Shown piece by piece: positions 831 to 14,500 of a stretch of 64,000 nt of DNA; within the stretch, counting starts at the first letter, position 1, and every line of letters starts with the position of its first letter. Origin of the DNA: Euprymna scolopes (lineage: Eukaryota). Made by a program: the position numbers and the translations under genes. The notes beneath the pieces were generated by a model. The model was not told where the DNA came from. It ran no database searches and saw nothing but the letters and a program-made list of their open reading frames with translations. The DNA lies in NCBI GenBank assembly GCA_053919585.1, contig CM132828.1, one strand, 5' to 3'.

Positions 831-1738
831 ATAATAATTTTGGTTTTGAGATTAATAGTACATTATTAGTAAATACGTTTGGAGTTGAAATTAATTGTAA
901 AGTAATCGTTAATAAGTTTGGGTTTGAGATTAATAGTATATTATTAGTAAATACGTTTTCAGTTAAAACTAATTGTAAATCAATTGCTAATAATTTTGGT
1001 TTTGAGATTATTAGTACATTTTTAGTAAATACGTTTGGAGTCAAAACTAATTGTAAATCAATCGCTAATCATTTTGGTTTTGAGATTATTAGTATAATTA
1101 GTAAATACGTATCGAGTTGAAATTAATTGTAAATTAATCGCTATCTATTTTGGGTTTGAGATTAATAGTACATTATCAGTAAATACGTTTGGAGTTGAAA
1201 TTAATTGTAAATTAATCGCTAATAATGTTGGTGTTAGATTAATAGTACATTATTAGTAAATACGTTTGGAGTTTAAATTAATTTTAAATCAATCGCGAAT
1301 CATTTTGGGTTTGAGAATAATAGTACATTATTAGTAAATACGTTTNNNNNNNNNNNNNNNNNNNNNNNNNNNNNNNNNNNNNNNNNNNNNNNNNNNNNNN
1401 NNNNNNNNNNNNNNNNNNNNNNNNNNNNNNNNNNNNNNNNNNNNNNNNNNNNNNNNNNNNNNNNNNNNNNNNNNNNNNNNNNNNNNNNNACACAGGAAAT
1501 ATGAGTTGGAACAATGACATCCAGGACATAATTTTGGTTTTGAGATTAATAGTACATTATTAGTAAATACGTTTGGCGTTGAAATTAATTGTAAATCAGT
1601 CTCTATCCATTTTATGTTTGAGATTAATAGTACATTATTAGTAAATAGGTTTGGACTTAAAATTAATTGTAAATTAATCGCTAATAATTTTGGTTTTGAG
1701 ATTAATAGTACATTATTAGTAAATACGTTTGGAGTTGA
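831..1738. repeat. 78-bp tandem repeat (minisatellite), left segments, spanning N-gap 1346-1489
   Basis: Unit approx. TAATAATTTTGGTTTTGAGATTAATAGTACATTATTAGTAAATACGTTTGGAGTTGAAAYTAATTGTAAATTAATCGC repeated head-to-tail; copies here are moderately diverged. Confidence 0.93.
1346..1489. other. Assembly gap or masked run (144 N)
   Basis: Run of n characters. Confidence 0.99.
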
Positions 1739-1936
1739 NNNNNNNNNNNNNNNNNNNNNNNNNNNNNNNNNNNNNNNNNNNNNNNNNNNNNNNNNNNNNN
1801 NNNNNNNNNNNNNNNNNNNNNNNNNNNNNNNNNNNNNNNNNNNNNNNNNNNNNNNNNNNNNNNNNNNNNNNNNNNNNNNNNNNNNNNNNNNNNNNNNNNN
1901 NNNNNNNNNNNNNNNNNNNNNNNNNNNNNNNNNNNN
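1739..1936. other. Assembly gap or masked run (198 N)
   Basis: Run of n characters; it hides the 5' junction of the LINE fragment that follows. Confidence 0.99.
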
Positions 1937-2282
1937 AATGTTGAATGCTCTGACGAACTGCTAGCACTTGTGCCCCCACGACGTGAACACACTCGACAGA
2001 CCCGACAGGCTGCCAAATCCCACCCCACATTTATCAGATCCCTAGATATAAAAGATCTTTCTACTCCAGTAATCTCTTCCCGAGAACAGCTAGACTTTGG
2101 AATTCCATTCCAGGTCCCTGCTTCCATAACTGTACTGAGGTGCAGAAGTTCAAGTACAACGCGAACCAACATCTTGCTGCCCAAATCCCTACATAGTAAC
2201 CCAGTAGTTGTTGCCCCTGATATTAGCCCCCTACACCAAAGAGGCAATGTGCCTTGTATGGGGTGAAAATGTAATAAAAAAA
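1937..2282 (+). mobile_element. 3' end of a non-LTR retrotransposon (CR1/L2-group LINE): ORF2 C-terminus, 3' UTR and A tail
   Basis: With one frameshift it translates to ECSDELLALVPPRREHTRQTRQAAKSHP/HIYQIPRYKRSFYSSNLFPRTARLWNSIPGPCFHNCTEVQKFKYNANQHLAAQIPT* (TAG 2194-2196). The FPRT..LWN..P...FK...N..L pattern is typical of CR1/L2-group ORF2 C-termini. It ends in GGTGAAAATGTAATAAAAAAA and the 78-bp array then resumes. Confidence 0.82.
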
Positions 2283-3470
2283 TATATTGCTAATAATTTT
2301 GGTTTTGAGACTAATAGTACATTATTAGTAAATACGTTTGGAGTTGAAACTAATTGTAAATTAATCGCTAATAATTTTGGTTTTGAGACTAATAGTATAT
2401 TATTAGTAAATATATCTGGAGTTGAAACTAATTGTAAATTAATCGCTAATAATTTTGGGTTTAAGATTAATAGTACATTATTAGTAAATACGTTTGGAGT
2501 TGAAACTAATTGTAATTCAATCGCTAATGATTTTGGTTTTGAGATTAATAGTATATTATTAGTAAATAGGTTTGGAGTTGACACTAATTGTAAATACATC
2601 GCTAATCATTTTGGGTTTGAGATTAATAGTATATTATTAGTAAATAGGTTTGGAGTTGACACTAATTGTAAATTAATCGCTAATCATTTTGGGTTTGAGA
2701 TTAATAGTATATTATTAGTAAATAGGTTTGGAGTTGACACTAATTGTAAATACATCGCTAATCATTTTGGGTTTGAGATTAATAGTATATTATTAGTAAA
2801 TAGGTTTGGAGTTGACACTAATTGTAAATACATCGCTAATCATTTTGGGTTTGAGATTAATAGTATATTATTAGTAAATAGGTTTGGAGTTGACACTAAT
2901 TGTAAATTAATCGCTAATCATTTTGGGTTTGAGATTAATAGTATATTATTAGTAAATAGGTTTGGAGTTGACACTAATTGTAAATACATCGCTAATCATT
3001 TTGGGTTTGAGATTAATAGTATATTATTAGTAAATAGGTTTGGAGTTGACACTAATTGTAAATACATCGCTAATCATTTTGGGTTTGAGATTAATAGTAT
3101 ATTATTAGTAAATACGTTTGGAGTTGAAACTAATTGTAAATACATCGCTAATCATTTTGGGTTTGAGATTAATAGTATATTATTAGTAAATAGGTTTGGA
3201 GTTGACACTAATTGTAAATACATCGCTAATCATTTTGGGTTTGAGATTAATAGTACATAATTAGTAAATACGTTTGGAGTTGAAACTAATTGTAATTCAA
3301 TCGCTAATCATTTTGGTTTTGAGATTAATAGTACATTTTTAGTAAATACGTTTGGAGTTGAAACTAATTGTAAATTAATCGCTATCCATTTTGGGTTTAA
3401 GATTAATATTACATTATTAGTAAATAGGTTTGGAGTTGGAATTAATTGTAAAATAATCACTAATAATTTT
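2283..3470. repeat. 78-bp tandem repeat, right segment (~15 copies)
   Basis: The period is visible as the 26-aa repeat NCKYIANHFGFEINSILLVNRFGVDT in ORF 2208..3260. The core 2570-3250 is nearly homogeneous. The array is cut mid-unit (TAATAATTTT|TG) by the 5' LTR. Confidence 0.96.
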
Positions 3471-3686
3471 TGTAATGTCTTTACCAAATAAAGGGAGACC
3501 ACCGCAGGTGTCACAGGAGTTACGGCCCCTGGCGACATCCGGGGTGGTGGGCAGTCTGATATCCACCGAGCACGATCTTCCTCGTTCGTTTTCTCTCTCT
3601 CGTCAATCTCCGTCCATCCTACAACCTCACTATGGTAATAACCGATATCTAGCAAGTATCGGTTACTTACCATAAGGATTATCACA
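3471..3686 (+). repeat. 5' LTR (216 bp)
   Basis: Starts TGTAATGTC, ends ATCACA; direct repeat of 7963-8182 with 8 substitutions and a 4-bp (CT)2 indel by manual alignment. Confidence 0.96.
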
Positions 3687-3687
3687 T

Positions 3688-3700
3688 TGGCGACAAGGAT
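3688..3700 (+). promoter_or_regulatory. Primer binding site, probably tRNA-Ser(GCU)
   Basis: TGGCGACAAGGAT starts 1 nt after the LTR. The complement of the metazoan tRNA-Ser(GCU) 3' end, from recall, is TGGCGACGAGGAT: 12/13 match, with a CG>CA change. Confidence 0.78.
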
Positions 3701-3780
3701 AGAGTAATTTACAAAAATAGACATAAGAAAACACGAAAAAAAAAACAACAGCAAACAGTCACACGTGTTGCAAAACAAAC

Positions 3781-4674
3781 ATGGCAGCCCTACCTCACTA
3801 CCCGGAATTCAACTGCGAGTCAGAAGCCAAAGCAGCAAGATGGACGAAATACATTACCAGATTGAGGAACTATTTTATCGCCCACGACATAGAGAGCGAT
3901 AAAAGACAAAAAGCAATTTTGCTAACGTTTGTTGGTGAGGCGATGAACGACCTCATTGACGAATTACCAGCCGAACAGACCACACCAGGAGAAAACGAAA
4001 CCCACTTCGACAAACTCGTCTCGGCTGTACAGGCTCATTTCAACCCCCAAAATAACACGGAATACAACTGATTTGTATTCCATAACATCAAACAAACCAC
4101 ACCGAATGTAGAGGACTTCTACCGGAAATTGAAAGAAGCAGCAGCTACATGTCACTTTGCAGACGCAAACGCTGAGATAAAGTCTCAACTGATAACAGGC
4201 TGTTCATCAGAAAAAGTCCGGCAAAAGGGTTTAATAAATTCTAACATGTCACTACACGACTTGATAAATTATGCCGGGACGACGGAAACAATAACAGCGC
4301 ACCTACAACAAATGCGCTTAGAGGACACGACAATACAAACTACTACTGCAGTAGTAAACAAAGTCACGTACGGACAGCGACAGACACGTGACCGTCCCCG
4401 GCAAATTCAGTGCAGGAATTGCAACGGAAAATATCCACATGAACGAGGACCAACGTCTTGCCCAGCATTCCAGAGCCAATGCACTTATTGCCGGAGATGG
4501 GGGCACTTCGCCTCTGTCTGTTTTAGAAAAATGAACGACGAGGACAGACAACGTAGAACAAGTCGTCCTCCACGTCCACAAGTCCAAACCAGCCGCCGAC
4601 CGGTGAACTGCATCGAGGACAACCAGCAGAACTCAACCAGCGGCAGTGACACAGAATATGTGTTTCATACAGGT
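3781..4674 (+). pseudogene. gag: gag region (298 codons) with one premature stop
   Basis: ORFs 3781..4071 and 4129..5451 share a frame and are separated only by TGA at 4069-4071 (likely CGA>TGA; EYN*FVF). Zinc knuckles CRNC-X5-H-X6-C and CTYCRRWGHFASVC (CX2CX4HX4C) at ~4411-4521. Confidence 0.9.
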
Positions 4675-7600
4675 AAGATGAAAAACCTTCCCTGTTTTGA
4701 TATATCTTTTGGCAATAGCCACCAAACGTTCAATGTGTTAGCCGATTCAGGAGCCACTATCAACATTTTGTCTGAAGCAGATTTCAAGTGTTTAAAACCG
4801 ACACCATGTCTCCGACCGACAAAAACTGTGATATCTGGATTTGGGGTCAAGCAAACTACTCCAGTTCTAGGCCAATTTAGGACCCTCCTAGAGTTTGGGG
4901 GCATCTCCTGCCAAGCTAACATACATGTAATAAAAAGCCCAGAAAAACCTATCATTGGCTGGGAAACATGTGAAAAGCTTAAACTTTTATCAGCAAAAAA
5001 GCTCCCAGTTAACCACATCAGCAACTCTGACACACAAATCCCGCAGACAACTCTTAAGCTTTTGGAGGACTATGCAGACCTATTCAATGGCTTAGGTAAA
5101 CTTAAAGAGAAAAAAGTCCATCTGCACATAGATGAAAATATACCACCCATCGCTCAGAGATACCGCAGAGTCCCCTTTCATGTAAGGAAGGACATAGAAG
5201 AGCTAATACAGAAAGACGAGAAACTGGGGGTGATTGAAAAAGCAGAAGGACCAACCCCGTGGGTATCCCCTATTGTGGTGGTACCTAAGAAAGACCAAAG
5301 TAAAATCAGAGTTTGCATTGATATGAGAGCGGCAAACAAAGCTATCAAAAGGGAACGTCACCCTACGCCCACACTTGATGAGCTGAAGGCCATTCTATCG
5401 GGAGCCAGTGTCTTTAGCAAGTTAGACCTCAATCAGGGCTACAACCACTAGCTGAAGAATCCCGATACATTACCACGTTCGCAACACACCTGGGCCTATA
5501 TAGATACAAAAGACTATTTTTCGGTGTCAACTCCGCCAGCGAAATATTTCAGGAAGAGATTAGCCAGGCACTCGCAGGGATTGAGGGAGCCATCAACATC
5601 AGTGATGACATTCTTTGCTTTGGATTGAACCAGCAAGACCACGACGGAAATCTCCGGAAAGTATTTCAACAACTACGCGAAAAAGGCCTAACACTGAATA
5701 GCAGCAAATGTGAATACAACAAGAGGTCATTGGAATTCCTCGGACACACATTCGGTAATGAAGGCATCAGCCCAAGTAACCTTAAAATAAAAACAATCCT
5801 CGAATTACCAGACCCCCAAAACGCATCAGAAGTCAGAAGTTTGTTGGGGATGACCAACTTTTGCGGTGCACAATTCATTTCAGACTACGCAACCCTGACT
5901 CATGAACTGCGTCAGTTAACAAAAAAAAAAACACTCAGTAGTCCTGGACTGAGCACCACACTGAATGTTTAAAAAACCTCAAGGAGGCCTTGAGCAAAGC
6001 ATGCTCACTAGCCTACTTCCACCCTAATAAACATACTGAGATGTATACCGATGCCAGTATTGTAGGCATATCTGCTGTACTATCACAAGACGGGCGGGTA
6101 GTACAATTTGCAAGCCGAGCACTATCCACAGTTGAACAAAGATACTCTCAAACAGAGCGGGAGGCCCTCGCCATCCCGTGGGCATGTGAACACTTTCACA
6201 TATATATCTTTGGGGCCCCATTCACTGTTTATACAGATCATAAGCCCTCAACATCGATCTTTAATAACACCCGCTTCCAACTATCTGCGCGCATTGAACG
6301 TTGGGTTTTGAGAACACAGCCATACAATATGACTGTCACATACCAACCAGGTCATGACAACCCAGCCGACTATCTCAGCCGCCATCCAGTACATCTACCA
6401 CCAAGCAACAGGGAGCAGAAAATAGCGGAGGAGTATATAAACTATATTCTCTCAACGTCGACCCCCAAAGCAATGACAATTGATGAAGTTGCAATGGAAA
6501 CTGCGAAAGACAAGACGCTCACTGCAGTCATTCAAGCCATCCTCACCAACAAATGGCAAGGTGCCAATGACGGCATAAACAAAGCCACGTTTCTCACCCT
6601 ACATGCCAACCGTGATGAACTATCACTAGCACATGAGGACAGTATCATTCTGAAAGGGCGCCGGATAGTGCTACCTGAGACCCTACAAAACAGAGCTGCC
6701 AAAATAGCCCATGCTGGCCATCAAGGCGTCGTGAAATCCACGGCCCTCCTCCGGGAAAAAGTCTGGTTTAAAAACATGCAGCCTTTAGTAGAAGAAAACA
6801 TCAGGAACTGTCACACCTGTCAGATCAGCACTCACAAAACGGCAAGGGAGCCGCAGAAAATGTCCCCACTACCAGCAGCCCCATGGACAGAGGTTAGTGC
6901 TGACTTTGGACATCTCCAGAATGGGAAATATCTTCTTGTTGTCACAGACGAGTACTCACGCTACGTTGTTGTCGATATCCTGGACTCTATCTCAACAAAC
7001 TCGGTCATACTCCGTTTAGACAAGATATTTGCCAAATTCGGGGTACCAGTATCCCTCAAAACAGACAATGGCCCACCATTCAACAGCCATGATTTCAAAA
7101 CCTACGCCTCCGTCACCGGTTTCAGACACAGGAAGATAACACCTCTATGGTCAATGCTGAAACAGAACGCTTCATGCGCACTGTAAAAAAATCCATCAAA
7201 GCCGCCTTAATCAAAGGCCAAAGCTGGAAGCAGGAGCTATTTAAATTCCTGTTAGATTACCGAACGACACCGCACTGCACCACCGGTGTTTCCCCAGCCT
7301 CAATTCTATTTGGCCGGACCATAAAAAACCGCCTGCCACACCTAGTTGCACCTATAGCTGGAGACCATAGTATTAGGGTACGTGACACTCAAGCCAAGAA
7401 AACAATAAAGAAATATGCTGACAGAAAAGTATACGTAAAGCCCAATAATCTGAGTGTGGGTGACACCGTCGTTGTAAAAAGCGACCACACTTCAAAGGCA
7501 CACACCCCTATCAACCTAACCCATTAACCATAACAAAAAAAGGGATCCATGATTACTGCCACACACAAGGACAACCAAATTACAAGAAATGCCAGCTTCT

Positions 7601-7785
7601 TCAAAAAAATCCCTAAGCCACTAAGAAACCTCACACATGACCCACCTGAATACTCTTCATCTGAAGATGAGGGACACATGCATGTGACAGCATCACCAAA
7701 ATCTAAAGAAAACCAGGGACAACACTCTTCAAACCTCAGACGCTCAGGCCGCACAAGACGGCCACCCAAAAGATTTGATTGCTAA
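4675..7785 (+). pseudogene. pol: pol region (protease, RT, RNase H, integrase), in frame with gag, disrupted
   Basis: Protease LADSGATIN (Asp at 4744). RT PWVSPIVVVPK, RVCIDMR, FSKLDL, ESRYITTF, NISDDIL (5595-5615). RNase H TDAS, YSQTEREALA, TDHKP, ADYLSR. Integrase HAGH...CHTC, ADFG, TDNGPPF, AETERF. Basic tail RRSGRTRRPPKRF then TAA 7783-7785. Frameshifts near 5447, 5921-5931 (A run, plus a TAG), 7147 and ~7500-7545. Confidence 0.94.
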
Positions 7786-7945
7786 ATGCTACAAATACCC
7801 CTGTACATAATAATGCATAATTATCATTTTCTTTCCCTTAGGTTGACAGATGCTTCCCTCCAACCCAGCAACGCAAACACTCCAGTCACACCACGCATGA
7901 ACAAACTCCTTGATGAATATAAAAAAAAATTATAAAATAAACTTT

Positions 7946-7959
7946 AAAAAAAAAGAGAG
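7946..7959 (+). promoter_or_regulatory. Polypurine tract
   Basis: AAAAAAAAAGAGAG, 3 nt upstream of the 3' LTR. Confidence 0.85.
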
Positions 7960-7962
7960 CAT

Positions 7963-8182
7963 TGTAATGTCTTTGCCAAATAAAGGGAGACCACCGCAGG
8001 TGTCACAGGAGTTACGGCCCCTGGGGACATCCGGGGTAGTAGTCAGTCTGATATCCACCGAGCACGATATTCCTCGTTCGTTTTCTCTCTCTCTCTCTTC
8101 AATCTCCGTCCATCCTACAACCTCACCATGGTAATAACCGATATCTAGCAAGTATCGGTTACTTACCATAAGGATTATCACA
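7963..8182 (+). repeat. 3' LTR (220 bp)
   Basis: TGTAATGTC...ATTATCACA, direct repeat of 3471-3686. Confidence 0.96.
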
Positions 8183-8538: not shown

Positions 8539-11500
8539 TTTACTTGCGTTTACAACAGGTTTGAATTATTTATGCAAAATTAATATATATTTCGTTAATG
8601 TGTCACTGTAGTTAGATGAGCATCTTAAATGTTTGTCTGGTGTTTACTTGCGTTTACAACAGGTTTGAATTATTTATGCAAAATTAATATATATTTCGTT
8701 AATGTGTCATTGTAGTTAGATGAGCATCTTAAATGTTTGTCTGGTGTTTACTTGCGTTTACAACAGGTTTGAATTATTTATGCAAAATTAATATATATTT
8801 CGTTAATGTGTCACTGTAGTTAGATGAGCATCTTAAATGTTTGTCTGGTGTTTACTTGCGTTTACAACAGGTTTGAATTATTTATGCAAAATTAATATAT
8901 ATTTCGTTAATGTGTCATTGTAGTTAGATGAGCATCTTAAATGTTTGTATGGTGTTTACTTGCGTTTACAACAGGTTTGAATTATTTATGCAAAATTAAT
9001 ATATATTTCGTTAATGTGTCACTGTAGTTAGATGAGCATCTTAAATGTTTGTCTGGTGTTTACTTGCGTTTACAACAGGTTTGAATTATTTATGCAAAAT
9101 TAATATATATTTCGTTAATGTGTCATTGTAGTTAGATGAGCATCTTAAATGTTTGTCTGGTGTTTACTTGCGTTTACAACAGGTTTGAATTATTTATGCA
9201 AAATTAATATATATTTCGTTAATGTGTCACTGTAGTTAGATGAGCATCTTAAATGTTTGTCTTGTGTTTACTTGCGTTTACAACAGGTTTGAATTATTTA
9301 TGCAAAATTAATATATATTTCGTTAATGTGTCACTGTAGTTAGATGAGCATCTTAAATGTTTGTCTGGTGTTTACTTGCGTTTACAACAGGTTTGAATTA
9401 TTTATGCAAAATTAATATATATTTCGTTAATGTGTCACTGTAGTTAGATAACCATCTTAAATGTTTGTCTGGTGTTTACTTGCGTTTACAACAGGTTTGA
9501 ATTATTTATGCAAAATTAATATATATTTCGTTAATGTGTCACTGTAGTTAGATGACAATCTTAAATGTTTGTCTGGTGTTTACTTGCGTTTACAACAGGT
9601 TTGAATTATTTATGCAAAATTAATATATATTTCGTTAATGTGTCACTGTAGTTAGATGAGCATCTTAAATGTTTGTCTGGTGTTTACTTGCGTTTACAAC
9701 AGGTTTGAATTATTTATGCAAAATTAATATATATTTCGTTAATGTGTCACTGTAGTTAGATGAGCAACTTAAATGTTTGTCTGGTGTTTACTTGCGTTTA
9801 CAACAGGTTTGAATTATTTATGCAAAATTAATATATATTTCGTTAATGTGTCACTGTAGTTAAATGAGTATCTTAAATGTTTGTCTGGTGTTTACTTGCG
9901 TTTACAACAGGTTTGAATTATTTATGCAAAATTAATACATATTTCGTTAATGTGTCACTGTAGTTAGATAACCATCTTAAATATTTGTCTGGTGTTTACT
10001 TGCGTTTACAACAGGTTTGAATTATTTATGCAAAATTAATATATATTTCGTTAATGTGTCACTGTAGTTAATGAGCATCCTGAATGTTTGTCTGGTGTTT
10101 ACTTGCGTTTACGACAGGTTTGAATTATTTATGCAAAATTAATATATATTTCGTTAATGTGTCACTGTAGTTAGATGAGCATCTTAAATGTTTGTCTGGT
10201 GTTTACTTGCGTTTACAACAGGTTTGAATTATTTATGCAAAATTAATATATATTTCGTTAATGTGTCACTGTAGTTAGATAAGCATCTTAAATGTTTGTC
10301 TGGTGTTTACTTGCGTTCACAACAGGTTTGAATTATTTATGCAAAATTAATATATATTTCGTTAATGTGTCACTGTAGTAAGATGAGCATCTTAAATGTT
10401 TGTATGGTGTTTACTTGCGTTTACAACAGGTTTGAATTATTTATGTAAAATTAATATATATTTCGTTAATGTGTCACTGTAGTTAGATGAGCATCTTAAA
10501 TGTTTGTATGGTGTTTACTAGCGTTTACAACAGGTTTGAATTATTTATGTAAAATTAATATATATTTCGTTAATGTGTCACTGTAGTTAGATGAGCATCT
10601 TAAATGTTTGTCTTGTGTTTACTTGCGTTTACAACAGGTTTGAATTATTTATGAAAAATTAATATATATTTCGTTAATGTGTCACTGTAGTTAGATGAGC
10701 ATCTTAAATGTTTGTCTGGTGTTTACTTGGGTTTACAACAGGTTTGAATTATTTATGCAAAATCAATATATATTTCGTTAATGTGTCACTGTAGTTAGAT
10801 GAGCATCTTAAATGTTTGTCTGGTGTTTACTTGCGTTTACAACAGGTTTGAATTATTTATGCAAAATTAATATATTTCGTTAATGTGTCACTGTAGTTAG
10901 ATGAGCATCTTAAATGTTTGTCTGGTGTTTACTTGCGTTTACAACAGGTTTGAATTATTTATGCAAAATTAATATATTTCGTTAATGTGTCACTGTAGTT
11001 AGATGAGCATCTTAAATGTTTGTCTTGTGTTTACTTGCGTTTACAACAGGTTTGAATTATTTATGCAAAATTAATATATATTTCGTTAATGTGTCACTGT
11101 AGTTAGATGAGCATCTTAAATGTTTGTCTTGTGTTTACTTGCGTTTACAACAGGTTTGAATTATTTATGCAAAATAAATAGATATTTCGTTAATGTGTCA
11201 CTGTAGTTAGATGAGCATCTTAAATGTTTGTCTTGTGTTTACTTGCGTTTACAACAGGTTTGAATTATTTATGCAAAATTAATATATATTTCGTTAATGT
11301 GTCACTGTAGTTAGATGAGCATCTTAAATGTTTGTCTGGTGTTTACTTGCGTTTACAACAGGTTTGAATTATTTATGCAAAATTAATATATTTCGTTAAT
11401 GTGTCACTGTAGTTAGATGAGCATCTTAAATGTTTGTCTGGTGTTTACTTGCGTTTACAACAGGTTTGAATTATTTATGCAAAATTAATATATATTTCGT

Positions 11501-14500
11501 TAATGTGTCACTGTAGTTAGATGAGCATCTTAAATGTTTGTCTGGTGTTTACTTGGGTTTACAACAGGTTTGAATTATTTATGCAAAATCAATATATATT
11601 TCGTTAATGTGTCACTGTAGTTAGATGAGCATCTTAAATGTTTGTCTGGTGTTTACTTGCGTTTACAACAGGTTTGAATTATTTATGCAAAATTAATATA
11701 TTTCGTTAATGTGTCACTGTAGTTAGATGAGCATCTTAAATGTTTGTCTGGTGTTTACTTGCGTTTACAACAGGTTTGAATTATTTATGCAAAATTAATA
11801 TATATTTCGTTAATGTGTCACTGTAGTTAGATGAGCATCTTAAATGTTTGTCTTGTGTTTACTTGCGTTTACAACAGGTTTGAATTATTTATGCAAAATT
11901 AATAGATATTTCGTTAATGTGTCACTGTAGTTAGATGAGCATCTTAAATGTTTGTCTGGTGTTTACTTGCGTTTACAACAGGTTTGAATTATTTATGCAA
12001 AATTAATATATATTTCGTTAATGTGTCACTGTAGTTAGATGAGCATCTTAAATGTTTGTCTGGTGTTTACTTGCGTTTACAACAGGTTTGAATTATTTAT
12101 GCAAAATTAATATATATTTCGTTAATGTGTCACTGTAGTTAGATGACCATCTTAAATGTTTGTCTGGTGTTTACTTGCGTTTACAACAGGTTTGAATTAT
12201 TTATGCAAAATTAATATATATTTCGTTAATGTGCCACTGTAGTTAGATGAGCAACTTAAATGTTTGTCTGGTGTTTACTTGCGTTTACAACAGGTTTGAA
12301 TTATTTATGCAAAATTAATATATATTTCGTTAATGTGTAACTGTAGTTAGATGAGCAACTTAAATGTTTGTCTGGTGTTTACTTGCGTTTACAACAGGTT
12401 TGAATTATTTATGCAAAATTAATATATATTTCGTTAATGTGTCACTGTAGTTAGATGAGTATCTTAAATGTTTGTCTGGTGTTTACTTGCGTTTACAACA
12501 GGTTTGAATTATTTATGCAAAATTAATATATTTCGTTAATGTGTTCTGTAGTTAGATGAGCATCTTAAATGTTTGTCTGGTGTTTACTTGCGTTTACAAC
12601 AGGTTTGAATTATTTATGCAAAATTAATATATATTTCGTTAATGTGTCACTGTAGTTAGATGAGCATCTTAAATGTTTGTCTGGTGTTTACTTGCGTTTA
12701 CAACAGGTTTGAATTATTTATGAAAAATTAATATATATTTCGTTAATGTGTCACTGTAGTTAGATGAGCATCTTAAATTTTTGTCTGGTGTTTACTTGGG
12801 TTTACAACAGGTTTGAATTATTTATGCAAAATCAATATATATTTCGTTAATGTGTCACTGTAGTTAGATGAGCATCTTAAATGTTTGACTGGTGTTTACT
12901 TGCGTTTACAACAGGTTTGAATTATTTATGACAAATTAATATATTTCGTTAATGTGTCACTGTAGTTAGATGAGCATCTTAAATGTTTGTCTGGTGTTTA
13001 CTTGCGTTTACAACAGGTTTGAATTATTTATGCAAAATTAATATATTTCGGTAATGTGTCACTGTAGTTAGATGAGCATCTTAAATGTTTGTCTTGTGTT
13101 TACTTGCGTTTACAACAGGTTTGAATTATTTATGCAAAATTAATATATATTTCGTTAATGTGTCACTGTAGTTAGATGAGCATCTTAAATGTTTGTCTTG
13201 TGTTTACTTGCGTTTACAACAGGTTTGAATTATTTATGCAAAATTAATATATTTTTCGTTAATGTGTCACTGTAGTTAGATGAGCATCTTAAATGTTTGT
13301 CTGGTGTTTACTTGCGTTTACAACAGGTTTGAATTATTTATGCAACATTAATATATATTTCGTTAATGTGTCACTGTAGTTAGATAACCATCTTAAATGT
13401 TTGTCTGGTGTTTACTTGCGTTTACAACAGGTTTGAATTATTTATGCAAAATTAATATATATTTCGTTAATGTGTCACTGTAGTTAGATGACCATCTTAA
13501 ATGTTTGTCTGGTGTTTACTTGCGTTTACAACAGGTTTGAATTATTTATGCAAAATTAATATATATTTCGTTAATGTGTTACTGTAGTTAGATGAGCATC
13601 TTAAATGTTTGTCTGGTGTTTACTTGCGTTTACAACAGGTTTGAATTATTTATGCAAAATTAATATATATTTCGTTAATGTGTAACTGTAGTTAGATGAG
13701 CAACTTAAATGTTTGTCTGGTGTTTACTTGCGTTTACAACAGGTTTGAATTATTTATGCAAAATTAATATATATTTCGTTAATGTGTCACTGTAGTTAAA
13801 TGAGTATCTTAAATGTTTGTCTGGTGTTTACTTGCGTTTACAACAGGTTTGAATTATTTATGCAAAATTAATACATATTTCGTTAATGTGTCACTGTAGT
13901 TAGATAACCATCTTAAATATTTGTCTGGTGTTTACTTGCGTTTACAACAGGTTTGAATTATTTATGCAAAATTAATATATATTTCGTTAATGTGTCACTG
14001 TAGTTAATGAGCATCCTGAATGTTTGTCTGGTGTTTACTTGCGTTTACGACAGGTTTGAATTATTTATGCAAAATTAATATATATTTCGTTAATGTGTCA
14101 CTGTAGTTAGATGAGCATCTTAAATGTTTGTCTGGTGTTTACTTGCGTTTACAACAGGTTTGAATTATTTATGCAAAATTAATATATATTTCGTTAATGT
14201 GTCACTGTAGTTAGATAACCATCTTAAATGTTTGTCTGGTGTTTACTTGCGTTTACAACAGGTTTGAATTATTTATGCAAAATTAATAGATATTTCGTTA
14301 ATGTGTCACTGTAGTTAGATGAGCATCTTAAATGTTTGTCTGGTGTTTACTTGCGTTCACAACAGGTTTGAATTATTTATGCAAAATTAATATATATTTC
14401 GTTAATGTGTCACTGTAGTTAGATGAGCATCTTAAATGTTTGTATGGTGTTTACTTGCGTTTACAACAGGTTTGAATTATTTATGTAAAATTAATATATA

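What the first reader, a model, noticed from the sequence alone, without database searches (positions are those of the whole stretch)
4665..7850. Predicted whole-pol intron: a Gypsy element apparently built to make a Gag-only spliced mRNA
Seen in sequence: gag and pol are in one frame, with no programmed frameshift or stop at their boundary. Exactly at the Gag/protease boundary (EYVFHT-G) is a near-consensus 5' splice site, CAG|GTAAGA (GT at 4673-4674). 56 nt after the pol stop is a near-consensus 3' splice site, TTTTCTTTCCCTTAG|G (AG at 7840-7841), in an otherwise A/C-rich strand, with CATAAT branch-like motifs ~20-35 nt upstream. Joining 4672 to 7842 gives ACA G|GT TGA: the same Gly codon is rebuilt and a stop follows at once, so the product is a clean 298-codon Gag and the RNA keeps the PBS, PPT and LTR ends. 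Established: single-ORF elements need excess Gag, and splicing supplies it in Ty1/copia elements (Drosophila copia, Arabidopsis EVADE). Inference: this Mag-like Ty3/Gypsy family does the same by excising all 3169 nt of pol. I do not know of a description of this for the group but cannot search the literature. This copy has a stop in gag, so the mechanism would apply to active family members.
Basis: partly seen in the sequence, partly recalled or inferred. Interest (0 to 1): 0.85.

Follow-up and report, generated by a model that had tools for sequence, protein, structure and literature searches.

The report
Possible Gag-only splice in cuttlefish retrotransposon
A young, abundant retrovirus-like jumping gene in a cuttlefish-type genome carries its two strongest splice signals exactly where cutting out the whole enzyme gene would leave a message for the coat protein alone, but I could not test whether the cell uses them.

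Summary
CAG|GTAAGA (GT 4673-4674) lies three codons after the conserved YVF motif that ends Gag. A 13-base pyrimidine run plus AG|G (AG 7840-7841) lies 56 nt after the pol stop. Joining them rebuilds a Gly codon followed at once by TGA.

The host element is a 4.7-kb single-ORF Ty3/gypsy LTR retrotransposon. It has at least 54-83 near-identical copies in a 5.9-Gb mollusc genome.

- **For splicing:** under a generic splice matrix the two sites rank first of about 150 GT and about 285 AG. Older subfamilies in the same genome keep the donor, the acceptor and an immediate stop (TGA becomes TAA). PolyA RNA runs hold both gag and pol.
- **Against:** the closest relatives whose DNA I could read (55-67% protein identity) lack both sites. 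Forty full-length relatives show no shared donor-acceptor design. The genome holds no copy with the spliced junction.
- **Not tested:** the one read-mapping call was lost to a filter, so no junction read was sought.

Splicing for Gag supply is known in Ty1/copia elements. I found no description for Ty3/gypsy. Verdict: a well-founded, cheaply testable prediction, about 45% likely to be real.

The parts
3471..3686 (+). 5' LTR (TG...CA, 216 nt). AATAAA lies at 3487-3492.
   Evidence: Direct repeat with 7963-8182 at 94-95% identity; sequence read.
3688..3699 (+). Primer-binding site TGGCGACAAGGA, one base after the LTR.
   Evidence: Read. Nearly the same PBS occurs in distant relatives L085 and L172.
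3781..4672 (+). gag: Retrotrans_gag domain and CCHC knuckle (4480-4521), ending three codons after the conserved EYVF motif. This copy has an in-frame TGA at 4069-4071.
   Evidence: Translation; Pfam PF03732; lineage alignments.
4670..4678 (+). Candidate 5' splice site CAG|GTAAGA (GT 4673-4674), phase 1, inside codons Thr-Gly-Lys.
   Evidence: Rank 1 of 147-154 GT. The exact 27-mer occurs in 54 copies. Kept in three subfamilies.
4673..7841 (+). Candidate 3169-nt intron covering all of pol: protease DSG at 4744-4752, then RT, RNase H and integrase. Pol stop TAA at 7783-7785. This copy has several frame breaks.
   Evidence: Pfam RVT_1, RT_RNaseH, Integrase_H2C2, rve; translation; tblastn against an open copy.
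7827..7841 (+). Candidate 3' splice site: 13-nt pyrimidine run followed by AG (7840-7841).
   Evidence: Rank 1 of 282-286 AG. Longest pyrimidine run in the element. 65 copies within 3 mismatches.
7842..7846 (+). GT completing the Gly codon, then TGA (7844-7846), the stop of the predicted spliced Gag ORF.
   Evidence: The older subfamily has TAA at the same place.
7946..7959 (+). Polypurine tract (A9 GAGAG), three bases before the 3' LTR.
   Evidence: Read.
7963..8182 (+). 3' LTR (220 nt). No target-site duplication: flanks are ATTTT and GATGC.

Best explanation
The element is a young single-ORF Ty3/gypsy LTR retrotransposon. I think part of its full-length transcript is spliced from 4672 to 7842.

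- Splicing would remove protease, reverse transcriptase, RNase H and integrase as one 3.17-kb intron.
- The remaining mRNA, probably about 1.3-1.5 kb (an estimate), would encode the complete 298-residue Gag.
- Gag would end three residues after the conserved YVF motif, with a stop 2 nt past the junction. The stop would therefore sit in the last exon, which I infer shields the mRNA from nonsense-mediated decay.
- This would supply the excess of capsid protein that a gag-pol fusion frame cannot give. Unspliced RNA would serve as the genome and the Gag-Pol message.

Shown: the sites, their rank, the reading-frame outcome, their persistence in subfamilies, and expression of unspliced polyA RNA. 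Inferred: that the spliceosome uses the sites, and that the product matters to the element.
For: - The sites are exactly as described, and the join gives Gly then TGA.
- Both are the top-scoring sites of their kind in the element.
- A pair this strong in the right order arose in 0.3% of composition-matched random elements.
- Sites this strong are rare in 40 relatives: 4 donors of 7 or more in 164 kb of ORF, and 1 acceptor of 8 or more.
- gag-pol is a single frame in many copies, so some device for extra Gag is needed.
- The donor lies at the natural end of Gag. The YxF motif is conserved across the lineage. Several Gag-only ORFs in relatives stop right at it.
- Three subfamilies that differ at nearby synonymous sites all keep ACAG|GTAAGA.
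- The older subfamily's acceptor variant, found in 4 copies, keeps the tract (one purine), has TAA in place of TGA in all 4, and keeps AG in 3.
- PolyA and oligo-dT RNA runs of two studies hold the family.
- Precedent for the logic: copia, EVADE and BARE1 (PMC5580714, PMC3735527, PMC12786077).
Against: - No junction read was looked for, because the tool call was lost.
- No genomic copy carries the junction, for either subfamily or with any other acceptor.
- Relatives at 55-67% protein identity have no donor at the homologous place and no comparable acceptor.
- In 36 independent relatives, donor-like motifs in the Gag-protease linker exceed the rest of the ORF about four-fold. Shuffling the codons of the linker already gives half of that (5 seen against 2.6 expected, P = 0.12; at a laxer cut-off 12 against 5.5, P = 0.01).
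- Thr-Gly-Lys is also kept at the protein level in the Acanthosepion relatives, so coding constraint may explain the donor.
- Near-optimal sites are unusual for an element that must keep much of its RNA unspliced.
- The whole pol region is assembled from polyA RNA.
- The branch-point match is weak.
Confidence: 0.45

Rival explanations
1. Coincidence. The donor is a by-product of the codons for Thr-Gly-Lys in a Lys/Gly/Arg-rich linker. The acceptor-like tract is an accident of the 3'UTR. The transcript is not spliced there to any meaningful extent.
For: - The closest readable relatives lack both sites.
- There is no joint donor-acceptor pattern in 40 relatives, and early stops after a virtual join occur at about the chance rate.
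- Linker codon composition alone yields donor-like strings.
- No spliced retrocopies exist.
- The finding was picked out of a very large scan, so rare coincidences are expected.
- Within-family invariance is uninformative, because the copies are 96-100% identical.
Against: - Both sites are rank 1 in the element.
- The joint chance is about 0.3% before position is considered.
- Positions, phase and immediate stop all fit.
- The design persists in older subfamilies, with a stop-preserving change.
Confidence: 0.35
2. The sites are used, but not as an adaptation for Gag supply. Splicing is instead a cost or a host handle. A large cryptic intron would destroy genomic RNA, or mark the transcript for small-RNA silencing, as reported for the cryptic intron of fission-yeast Tf2 and for stalled spliceosomes in Cryptococcus.
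For: The sites are strong. The precedent is summarised in PMC7175516. The design is absent from relatives, which suggests it is dispensable.
Against: - The family is very successful, with at least 54-83 young copies.
- It kept the sites through subfamily turnover.
- The product would be a clean, complete Gag, which a mere accident need not give.
Confidence: 0.1
3. Only the 5' site matters. U1 snRNP bound at CAG|GTAAGA protects the A-rich transcript from premature cleavage and polyadenylation without splicing. The pyrimidine tract is unrelated.
For: The sense strand is 35% A. The donor is conserved in three subfamilies. This reading rests on general knowledge of U1 'telescripting' and on no test made here.
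Against: It does not explain the top-ranked acceptor, its placement just after pol, or the preserved stop.
Confidence: 0.05

Closest known systems
Drosophila copia 2-kb spliced RNA (Ty1/copia; Yoshioka 1990, as cited in PMC5580714)
   Same: Single gag-pol ORF. An intron of about 3 kb removes pol and leaves a Gag-only mRNA that keeps both ends of the element.
   Different: A different superfamily (Pseudoviridae, with integrase before RT). In copia the splice is shown experimentally. Here it is only predicted.
Arabidopsis EVADE shGAG and barley BARE1 (Ty1/copia; PMC5580714, PMC3735527, PMC12786077)
   Same: Splicing near the gag end gives a stop soon after the junction and an mRNA dedicated to Gag.
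   Different: In EVADE the intron covers only the protease and is coupled to premature termination. Its sites are conserved across many copia families. Here the whole of pol is removed and the sites are not conserved outside this genome's subfamilies.
C. elegans Cer1 (Ty3/gypsy; PMC10309623)
   Same: An animal Ty3/gypsy element with no stop between gag and pol, whose genomic RNA carries working splice sites.
   Different: The five-exon spliced mRNA encodes CERV, an export factor built from parts of gag plus a 3' ORF. It does not encode Gag alone. The element here has no 3' ORF.
Plant Ogre elements (Ty3/gypsy; cited in PMC12786077)
   Same: A Ty3/gypsy element in which splicing sets the balance of products.
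   Different: The Ogre intron lies between protease and RT and must be removed to make Pol. The logic is the reverse of the one proposed here.
Tf1/Tf2 of fission yeast and Steamer-like elements of bivalves (PMC7175516, PMC8905726, PMC10974842)
   Same: Elements of 4.7-5 kb with one ORF of about 1330-1376 residues. Steamer-like elements have the same two zinc-finger arrangement in Gag.
   Different: No Gag-only splice is described for them. Tf1 is translated as a single polyprotein. The Steamer PBS (TGGTGTCAGAAG) differs from the one here.

Membership tests
Ty3/gypsy (Metaviridae) LTR retrotransposon | Two LTRs ending TG...CA, a PBS next to the 5' LTR, and a polypurine tract next to the 3' LTR | tested here: met
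   LTRs at 3471-3686 and 7963-8182. PBS at 3688-3699 and PPT at 7946-7959, read. No target-site duplication at this copy.
Ty3/gypsy (Metaviridae) LTR retrotransposon | Domain order Gag (CCHC), protease, RT, RNase H, integrase | tested here: met
   Pfam Retrotrans_gag, RVT_1, RT_RNaseH, Integrase_H2C2 and rve in that order. DSGA protease motif.
Mag / Steamer-like lineage | gag and pol fused in one ORF | tested here: met
   No stop or shift at the boundary in most copies. Relatives are single ORFs of 1300-1400 residues.
Mag / Steamer-like lineage | RT phylogeny placing it with Mag, SURL and Steamer reference elements | not tested
Relatives are named 'K02A2.6-like' in sea urchin, oyster, abalone and coral records.
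Mag / Steamer-like lineage | Steamer-type PBS (TGGTGTCAGAAG, per PMC8905726) | tested here: not met
   The PBS here is TGGCGACAAGGA.
Retroelements with a Gag-only spliced mRNA (copia / EVADE / BARE type) | A 5' splice site at or near the end of gag, a 3' splice site downstream, and a stop soon after the join | tested here: met
   In silico only.
Retroelements with a Gag-only spliced mRNA (copia / EVADE / BARE type) | The spliced RNA is observed | not testable with these tools
The protein and contig look-ups returned nothing from this species.
Retroelements with a Gag-only spliced mRNA (copia / EVADE / BARE type) | Splice sites conserved among related families | tested here: inconclusive
   Kept in three subfamilies of this genome. 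Absent from relatives at 55-67% identity. No shared pattern in 40 relatives.

The most novel reading that the evidence does not exclude
This cuttlefish family would be the first Ty3/gypsy (Metaviridae) element shown to solve the Gag-excess problem as Drosophila copia does, by treating all of pol as one intron. That would be an independent, recent invention within one host lineage. As an extension, the pol-less LTR-gag elements and Gag ORFs that stop exactly at the YxF motif in distant relatives (L172, P0330, P0217) would be reverse-transcribed copies of such spliced Gag mRNAs.
Probability: 0.4. Interest if true: 0.65.

Novelty: new variant of a known kind. Interest (0 to 1): 0.5.

Why it matters
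How single-ORF LTR retrotransposons obtain far more Gag than Pol is settled for only a few models: splicing in copia, EVADE and BARE, and other means in Tf1. For the large marine-invertebrate group of single-ORF Ty3/gypsy elements, which includes the Steamer-like elements linked to transmissible clam leukaemia, I found nothing described.

A confirmed whole-pol intron would show convergent evolution of the copia strategy in the other superfamily. It would also give annotators a signature to look for, and it would explain Gag-only transcripts or proteins seen in cephalopod data.

The prediction is unusually easy to test, because the family is expressed and the junction sequence is unique.

Tried and rejected
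- **Read mapping.** No read-level test was therefore possible.
- **Indirect RNA evidence.** The look-up of sequencing runs showed only that RNA runs hold gag and pol words about equally. That says nothing about splicing.
- **Genome letters.** I could not read the 3' ends of diverged families in this genome, except through short pattern searches.
- **Acanthosepion relatives.** The best comparative test is therefore missing.
- **Junction searches.** The junction 22-mer has no hit in JGI metagenomes. This means little.
- **Viral contigs.** No relatives were found.
- **Parent of L172.** The search for the full-length parent of the pol-less element L172 found nothing closer than 65%. I could not show that its boundary is a splice junction.
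- **P0003 (Acanthosepion, 328 aa).** This is a single-exon ORF that runs past the donor position, so it is not a spliced form.
- **Earlier notes.** Notes of this scan on this genome say nothing about splicing of this family.
- **U-box idea.** I considered that the pyrimidine tract could be a U-box beside the PPT, as in L087. I dropped this because here it lies 105 nt from the PPT.
Full report
**What is there.** The stretch lies in a 4.7-kb LTR retrotransposon at 3471-8182.
- The LTRs are 216 and 220 nt long and 94-95% alike.
- A PBS (TGGCGACAAGGA) starts at 3688, and a polypurine tract ends three bases before the 3' LTR.
- The coding part gives Retrotrans_gag, a CCHC knuckle, a DSGA protease motif, RVT_1, RT_RNaseH, Integrase_H2C2 and rve. 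This is the Ty3/gypsy order.
- This copy is broken. It has a TGA at gag codon 97 (4069-4071) and several frame breaks in pol.
- It has no target-site duplication. It sits between a 78-nt satellite and, about 350 nt beyond the 3' LTR, a 104-nt satellite.

**The observation.**
- CAG|GTAAGA has its GT at 4673-4674.
- The pol stop TAA is at 7783-7785.
- A 13-nt pyrimidine run (7827-7839) is followed by AG at 7840-7841, then G.
- Joining 4672 to 7842 rebuilds GGT, and TGA follows. In copies without the gag stop the product is a 298-residue Gag.
- The CATAAT motifs are at the stated distance but match a branch-point consensus only loosely.

**The family.** The genome is 5.9 Gb in 925 contigs.
- RNA runs that hold the element are labelled mollusc or invertebrate.
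- The nearest proteins are from the cuttlefish Acanthosepion pharaonis, at 73-82% identity.
- The exact 27-mer around the donor occurs 54 times. A 32-mer occurs 83 times within three mismatches, and the acceptor 28-mer 65 times.
- The best 40 copies are 96-100% identical to the window copy.
- In most of 30 copies the frame runs from gag into protease with no stop or shift. In four it stays open over all roughly 900 codons that the loci cover.
- The donor is unchanged in 28 of 30 copies and the acceptor with its TGA in 30 of 30. With copies this young, that says nothing about selection.

**Strength of the sites.** The numbers are therefore approximate and not host-specific.
- The donor ranks first of 147-154 GT and the acceptor first of 282-286 AG.
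- In 1000 first-order Markov imitations, 17% had a donor this good, 3.7% an acceptor this good, and 0.3% both in the right order.
- Relatives serve as an empirical null. In 164 kb of ORF there were 4 donors of 7 or more and 1 acceptor of 8 or more. In 7.2 kb of 3'UTR no acceptor reached 8.
- Position, phase and the immediate stop make chance less likely still.
- This finding was selected from a very large scan, however, so a rare coincidence cannot be excluded on statistics alone.

**Expression.** PolyA and oligo-dT RNA-seq runs from two studies hold 59-68% of the sampled words of gag and 67-69% of those of the putative intron. Both values are close to those in runs of unrecorded kind, some perhaps DNA. 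Unspliced polyadenylated RNA therefore exists, and the family is expressed. The junction test is feasible for anyone who can map reads. I could not do it.

**Retrocopies.** None exists.
- A 38-mer across the junction has no match within three mismatches.
- A degenerate 29-mer covering both subfamilies has no match either.
- The exon end followed by anything other than G gives only one point mutant and two matches at the chance level of the control.
- This weighs mildly against abundant, packaged spliced RNA. Spliced retroviral RNAs are often poorly packaged, so the result is not decisive.

**Comparison within the genome.** Pattern searches that print the matched letters revealed older subfamilies.
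- Copies with GTA TTT or GTA TTC in place of GTG TTT at the Val and Phe codons all carry ACAG|GTAAGA. Individual decayed copies show scattered changes.
- Fetched examples are 87%, 74.5% and 71% identical to the window copy over about 200 nt. The first two keep the donor intact.
- Four diverged copies share an acceptor variant with one purine in the tract and TAA instead of TGA. Three of the four keep AG. The stop after the join was thus preserved through a change.
- This is modest positive evidence. I estimate roughly a four-fold likelihood ratio from the stop alone.

**Comparison outside the genome.** A search with Gag-protease-RT found hundreds of single-ORF polyproteins of 1300-1400 residues. 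They come from snails, abalone, oysters, corals, sea urchins and many environmental contigs. I obtained DNA for 86 relatives, of which 40 are full length.
- The five closest (55-67% identity: L086, L087, L088, L089, L171) have no usable GT at the homologous place and no comparable acceptor after pol.
- L090 has a perfect AAG|GTAAGT eight codons before the protease DSGA. It has only a weak acceptor and no early stop.
- Pooled over 36 independent relatives, donor-like motifs scoring 5 or more occur at 0.62 per kb in the knuckle-to-DSG linker against 0.16 per kb elsewhere.
- Shuffling the linker's codons already gives 2.6 against 5 observed (P = 0.12). At a cut-off of 4 the figures are 5.5 against 12 (P = 0.01).
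- There is no joint excess of good donors with good acceptors, and early stops after a virtual join occur at about the chance rate.
- The design is therefore not ancestral to the lineage. If real, it arose within the cuttlefish branch.

**A side observation that bears on the idea.** A Gag profile search gave 37,529 hits, many of Gag-only length.
- Several end exactly at the YxF motif: P0322 ...EEGYVF, P0217 ...DDEYEF, P0330 ...DPDYMF.
- P0322 lies on a 1738-nt DNA contig (L172). The contig has an LTR end, the same type of PBS, gag, TAG directly after YVF, 57 nt, and then a purine run and an LTR-like start. It has no protease or RT in any frame.
- P0330 has no pol gene called within 3.5 kb downstream.
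- This is what a reverse-transcribed Gag-only mRNA would look like. It is equally what a deletion derivative or a domesticated gag would look like.
- The full-length parents were not found.
- Gag-only LTR elements are already known for copia families (PMC12477816).

**Literature.**
- Oberlin et al. call the splicing strategy unique to and conserved in Ty1/copia. They found no conserved splicing in Arabidopsis Ty3/gypsy. They cite the roughly 3-kb copia intron (PMC5580714).
- A 2025 review lists EVADE and BARE1 for the short-Gag isoform, and Ogre and Cer1 as the other spliced LTR elements (PMC12786077).
- The spliced sunflower elements are also copia (PMC7730604).
- Cer1 is a Ty3/gypsy element without a gag stop whose spliced mRNA encodes CERV, not Gag (PMC10309623).
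- Papers on Steamer-like elements describe a single ORF and no sense-strand splicing (PMC8905726, PMC10974842).
- I found no description of a Gag-only splice in Ty3/gypsy. The library does not cover most subscription journals.

**Verdict.** It lacks the one piece of evidence that matters, and it is not backed by conservation outside this genome.
- About 45%: the sites are used and yield a Gag-only mRNA.
- About 35%: coincidence.
- About 15%: the sites are used for some other reason.
If true, this would be a new variant of a known kind, namely the copia solution reinvented in a Ty3/gypsy element.

Noticed in passing
window 832-3470 and 8539-14000+: The element has no target-site duplication (flanks ATTTT and GATGC). 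It lies between a 78-nt satellite on the left and a 104-nt satellite that starts about 350 nt to its right. An inverted copy, 100% identical over the 601 nt compared and 2.2 Mb away on the same contig (L002), shares the left-flank satellite, which suggests a segmental duplication rather than a separate insertion.
   Followed up: partly
L172 1-1738 (metagenome contig); proteins P0322, P0330, P0217: Distant relatives include Gag ORFs that stop exactly at the conserved YxF motif. One of them is a pol-less LTR-PBS-gag-57 nt-PPT/LTR-like element. These could be retro-copied spliced Gag mRNAs, deletion derivatives or domesticated gag genes. Their full-length parents were not found.
   Followed up: partly
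window 3487-3492 and 7979-7984: AATAAA lies only 17 nt into each LTR. If it is the polyadenylation signal, U3 would be very short or R would start almost at the LTR edge. L090, a transcript-like contig of a relative, also ends about 10 nt after an AATAAA.
   Followed up: no
window 3688-3699; L085 ~28-44; L172 ~57-69: The PBS TGGCGAC(A/G)AGGAT is shared by family members and by relatives with only about 31-35% Gag identity. It differs from the published Steamer PBS. The lineage seems to keep a single tRNA primer, which I did not identify.
   Followed up: no
L090 1157-1165: A relative from a Logan contig has a perfect AAG|GTAAGT eight codons before the protease DSGA. It is the best donor among all 40 relatives, but it has no matching strong acceptor or early stop.
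   Followed up: partly
proteins P0331 and P0332 (Diadema antillarum RefSeq models): Two sea-urchin gene models of a related element are identical up to a few residues before the DDEYSF motif. One then continues into protease, while the other ends after a different 23-residue tail. This could be an annotated splice near the Gag end or simply two different copies.
   Followed up: no
window 1346-1489 and 1739-1936: Two runs of N (144 and 198 nt) lie inside the 78-nt satellite. I left them as they are.
   Followed up: no
L087 4507-4540: In one relative a T-rich run ending in AG lies directly against the polypurine tract, like a U-box. It scores as a strong acceptor, so such tracts can mimic 3' splice sites in LTR elements.
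   Followed up: no
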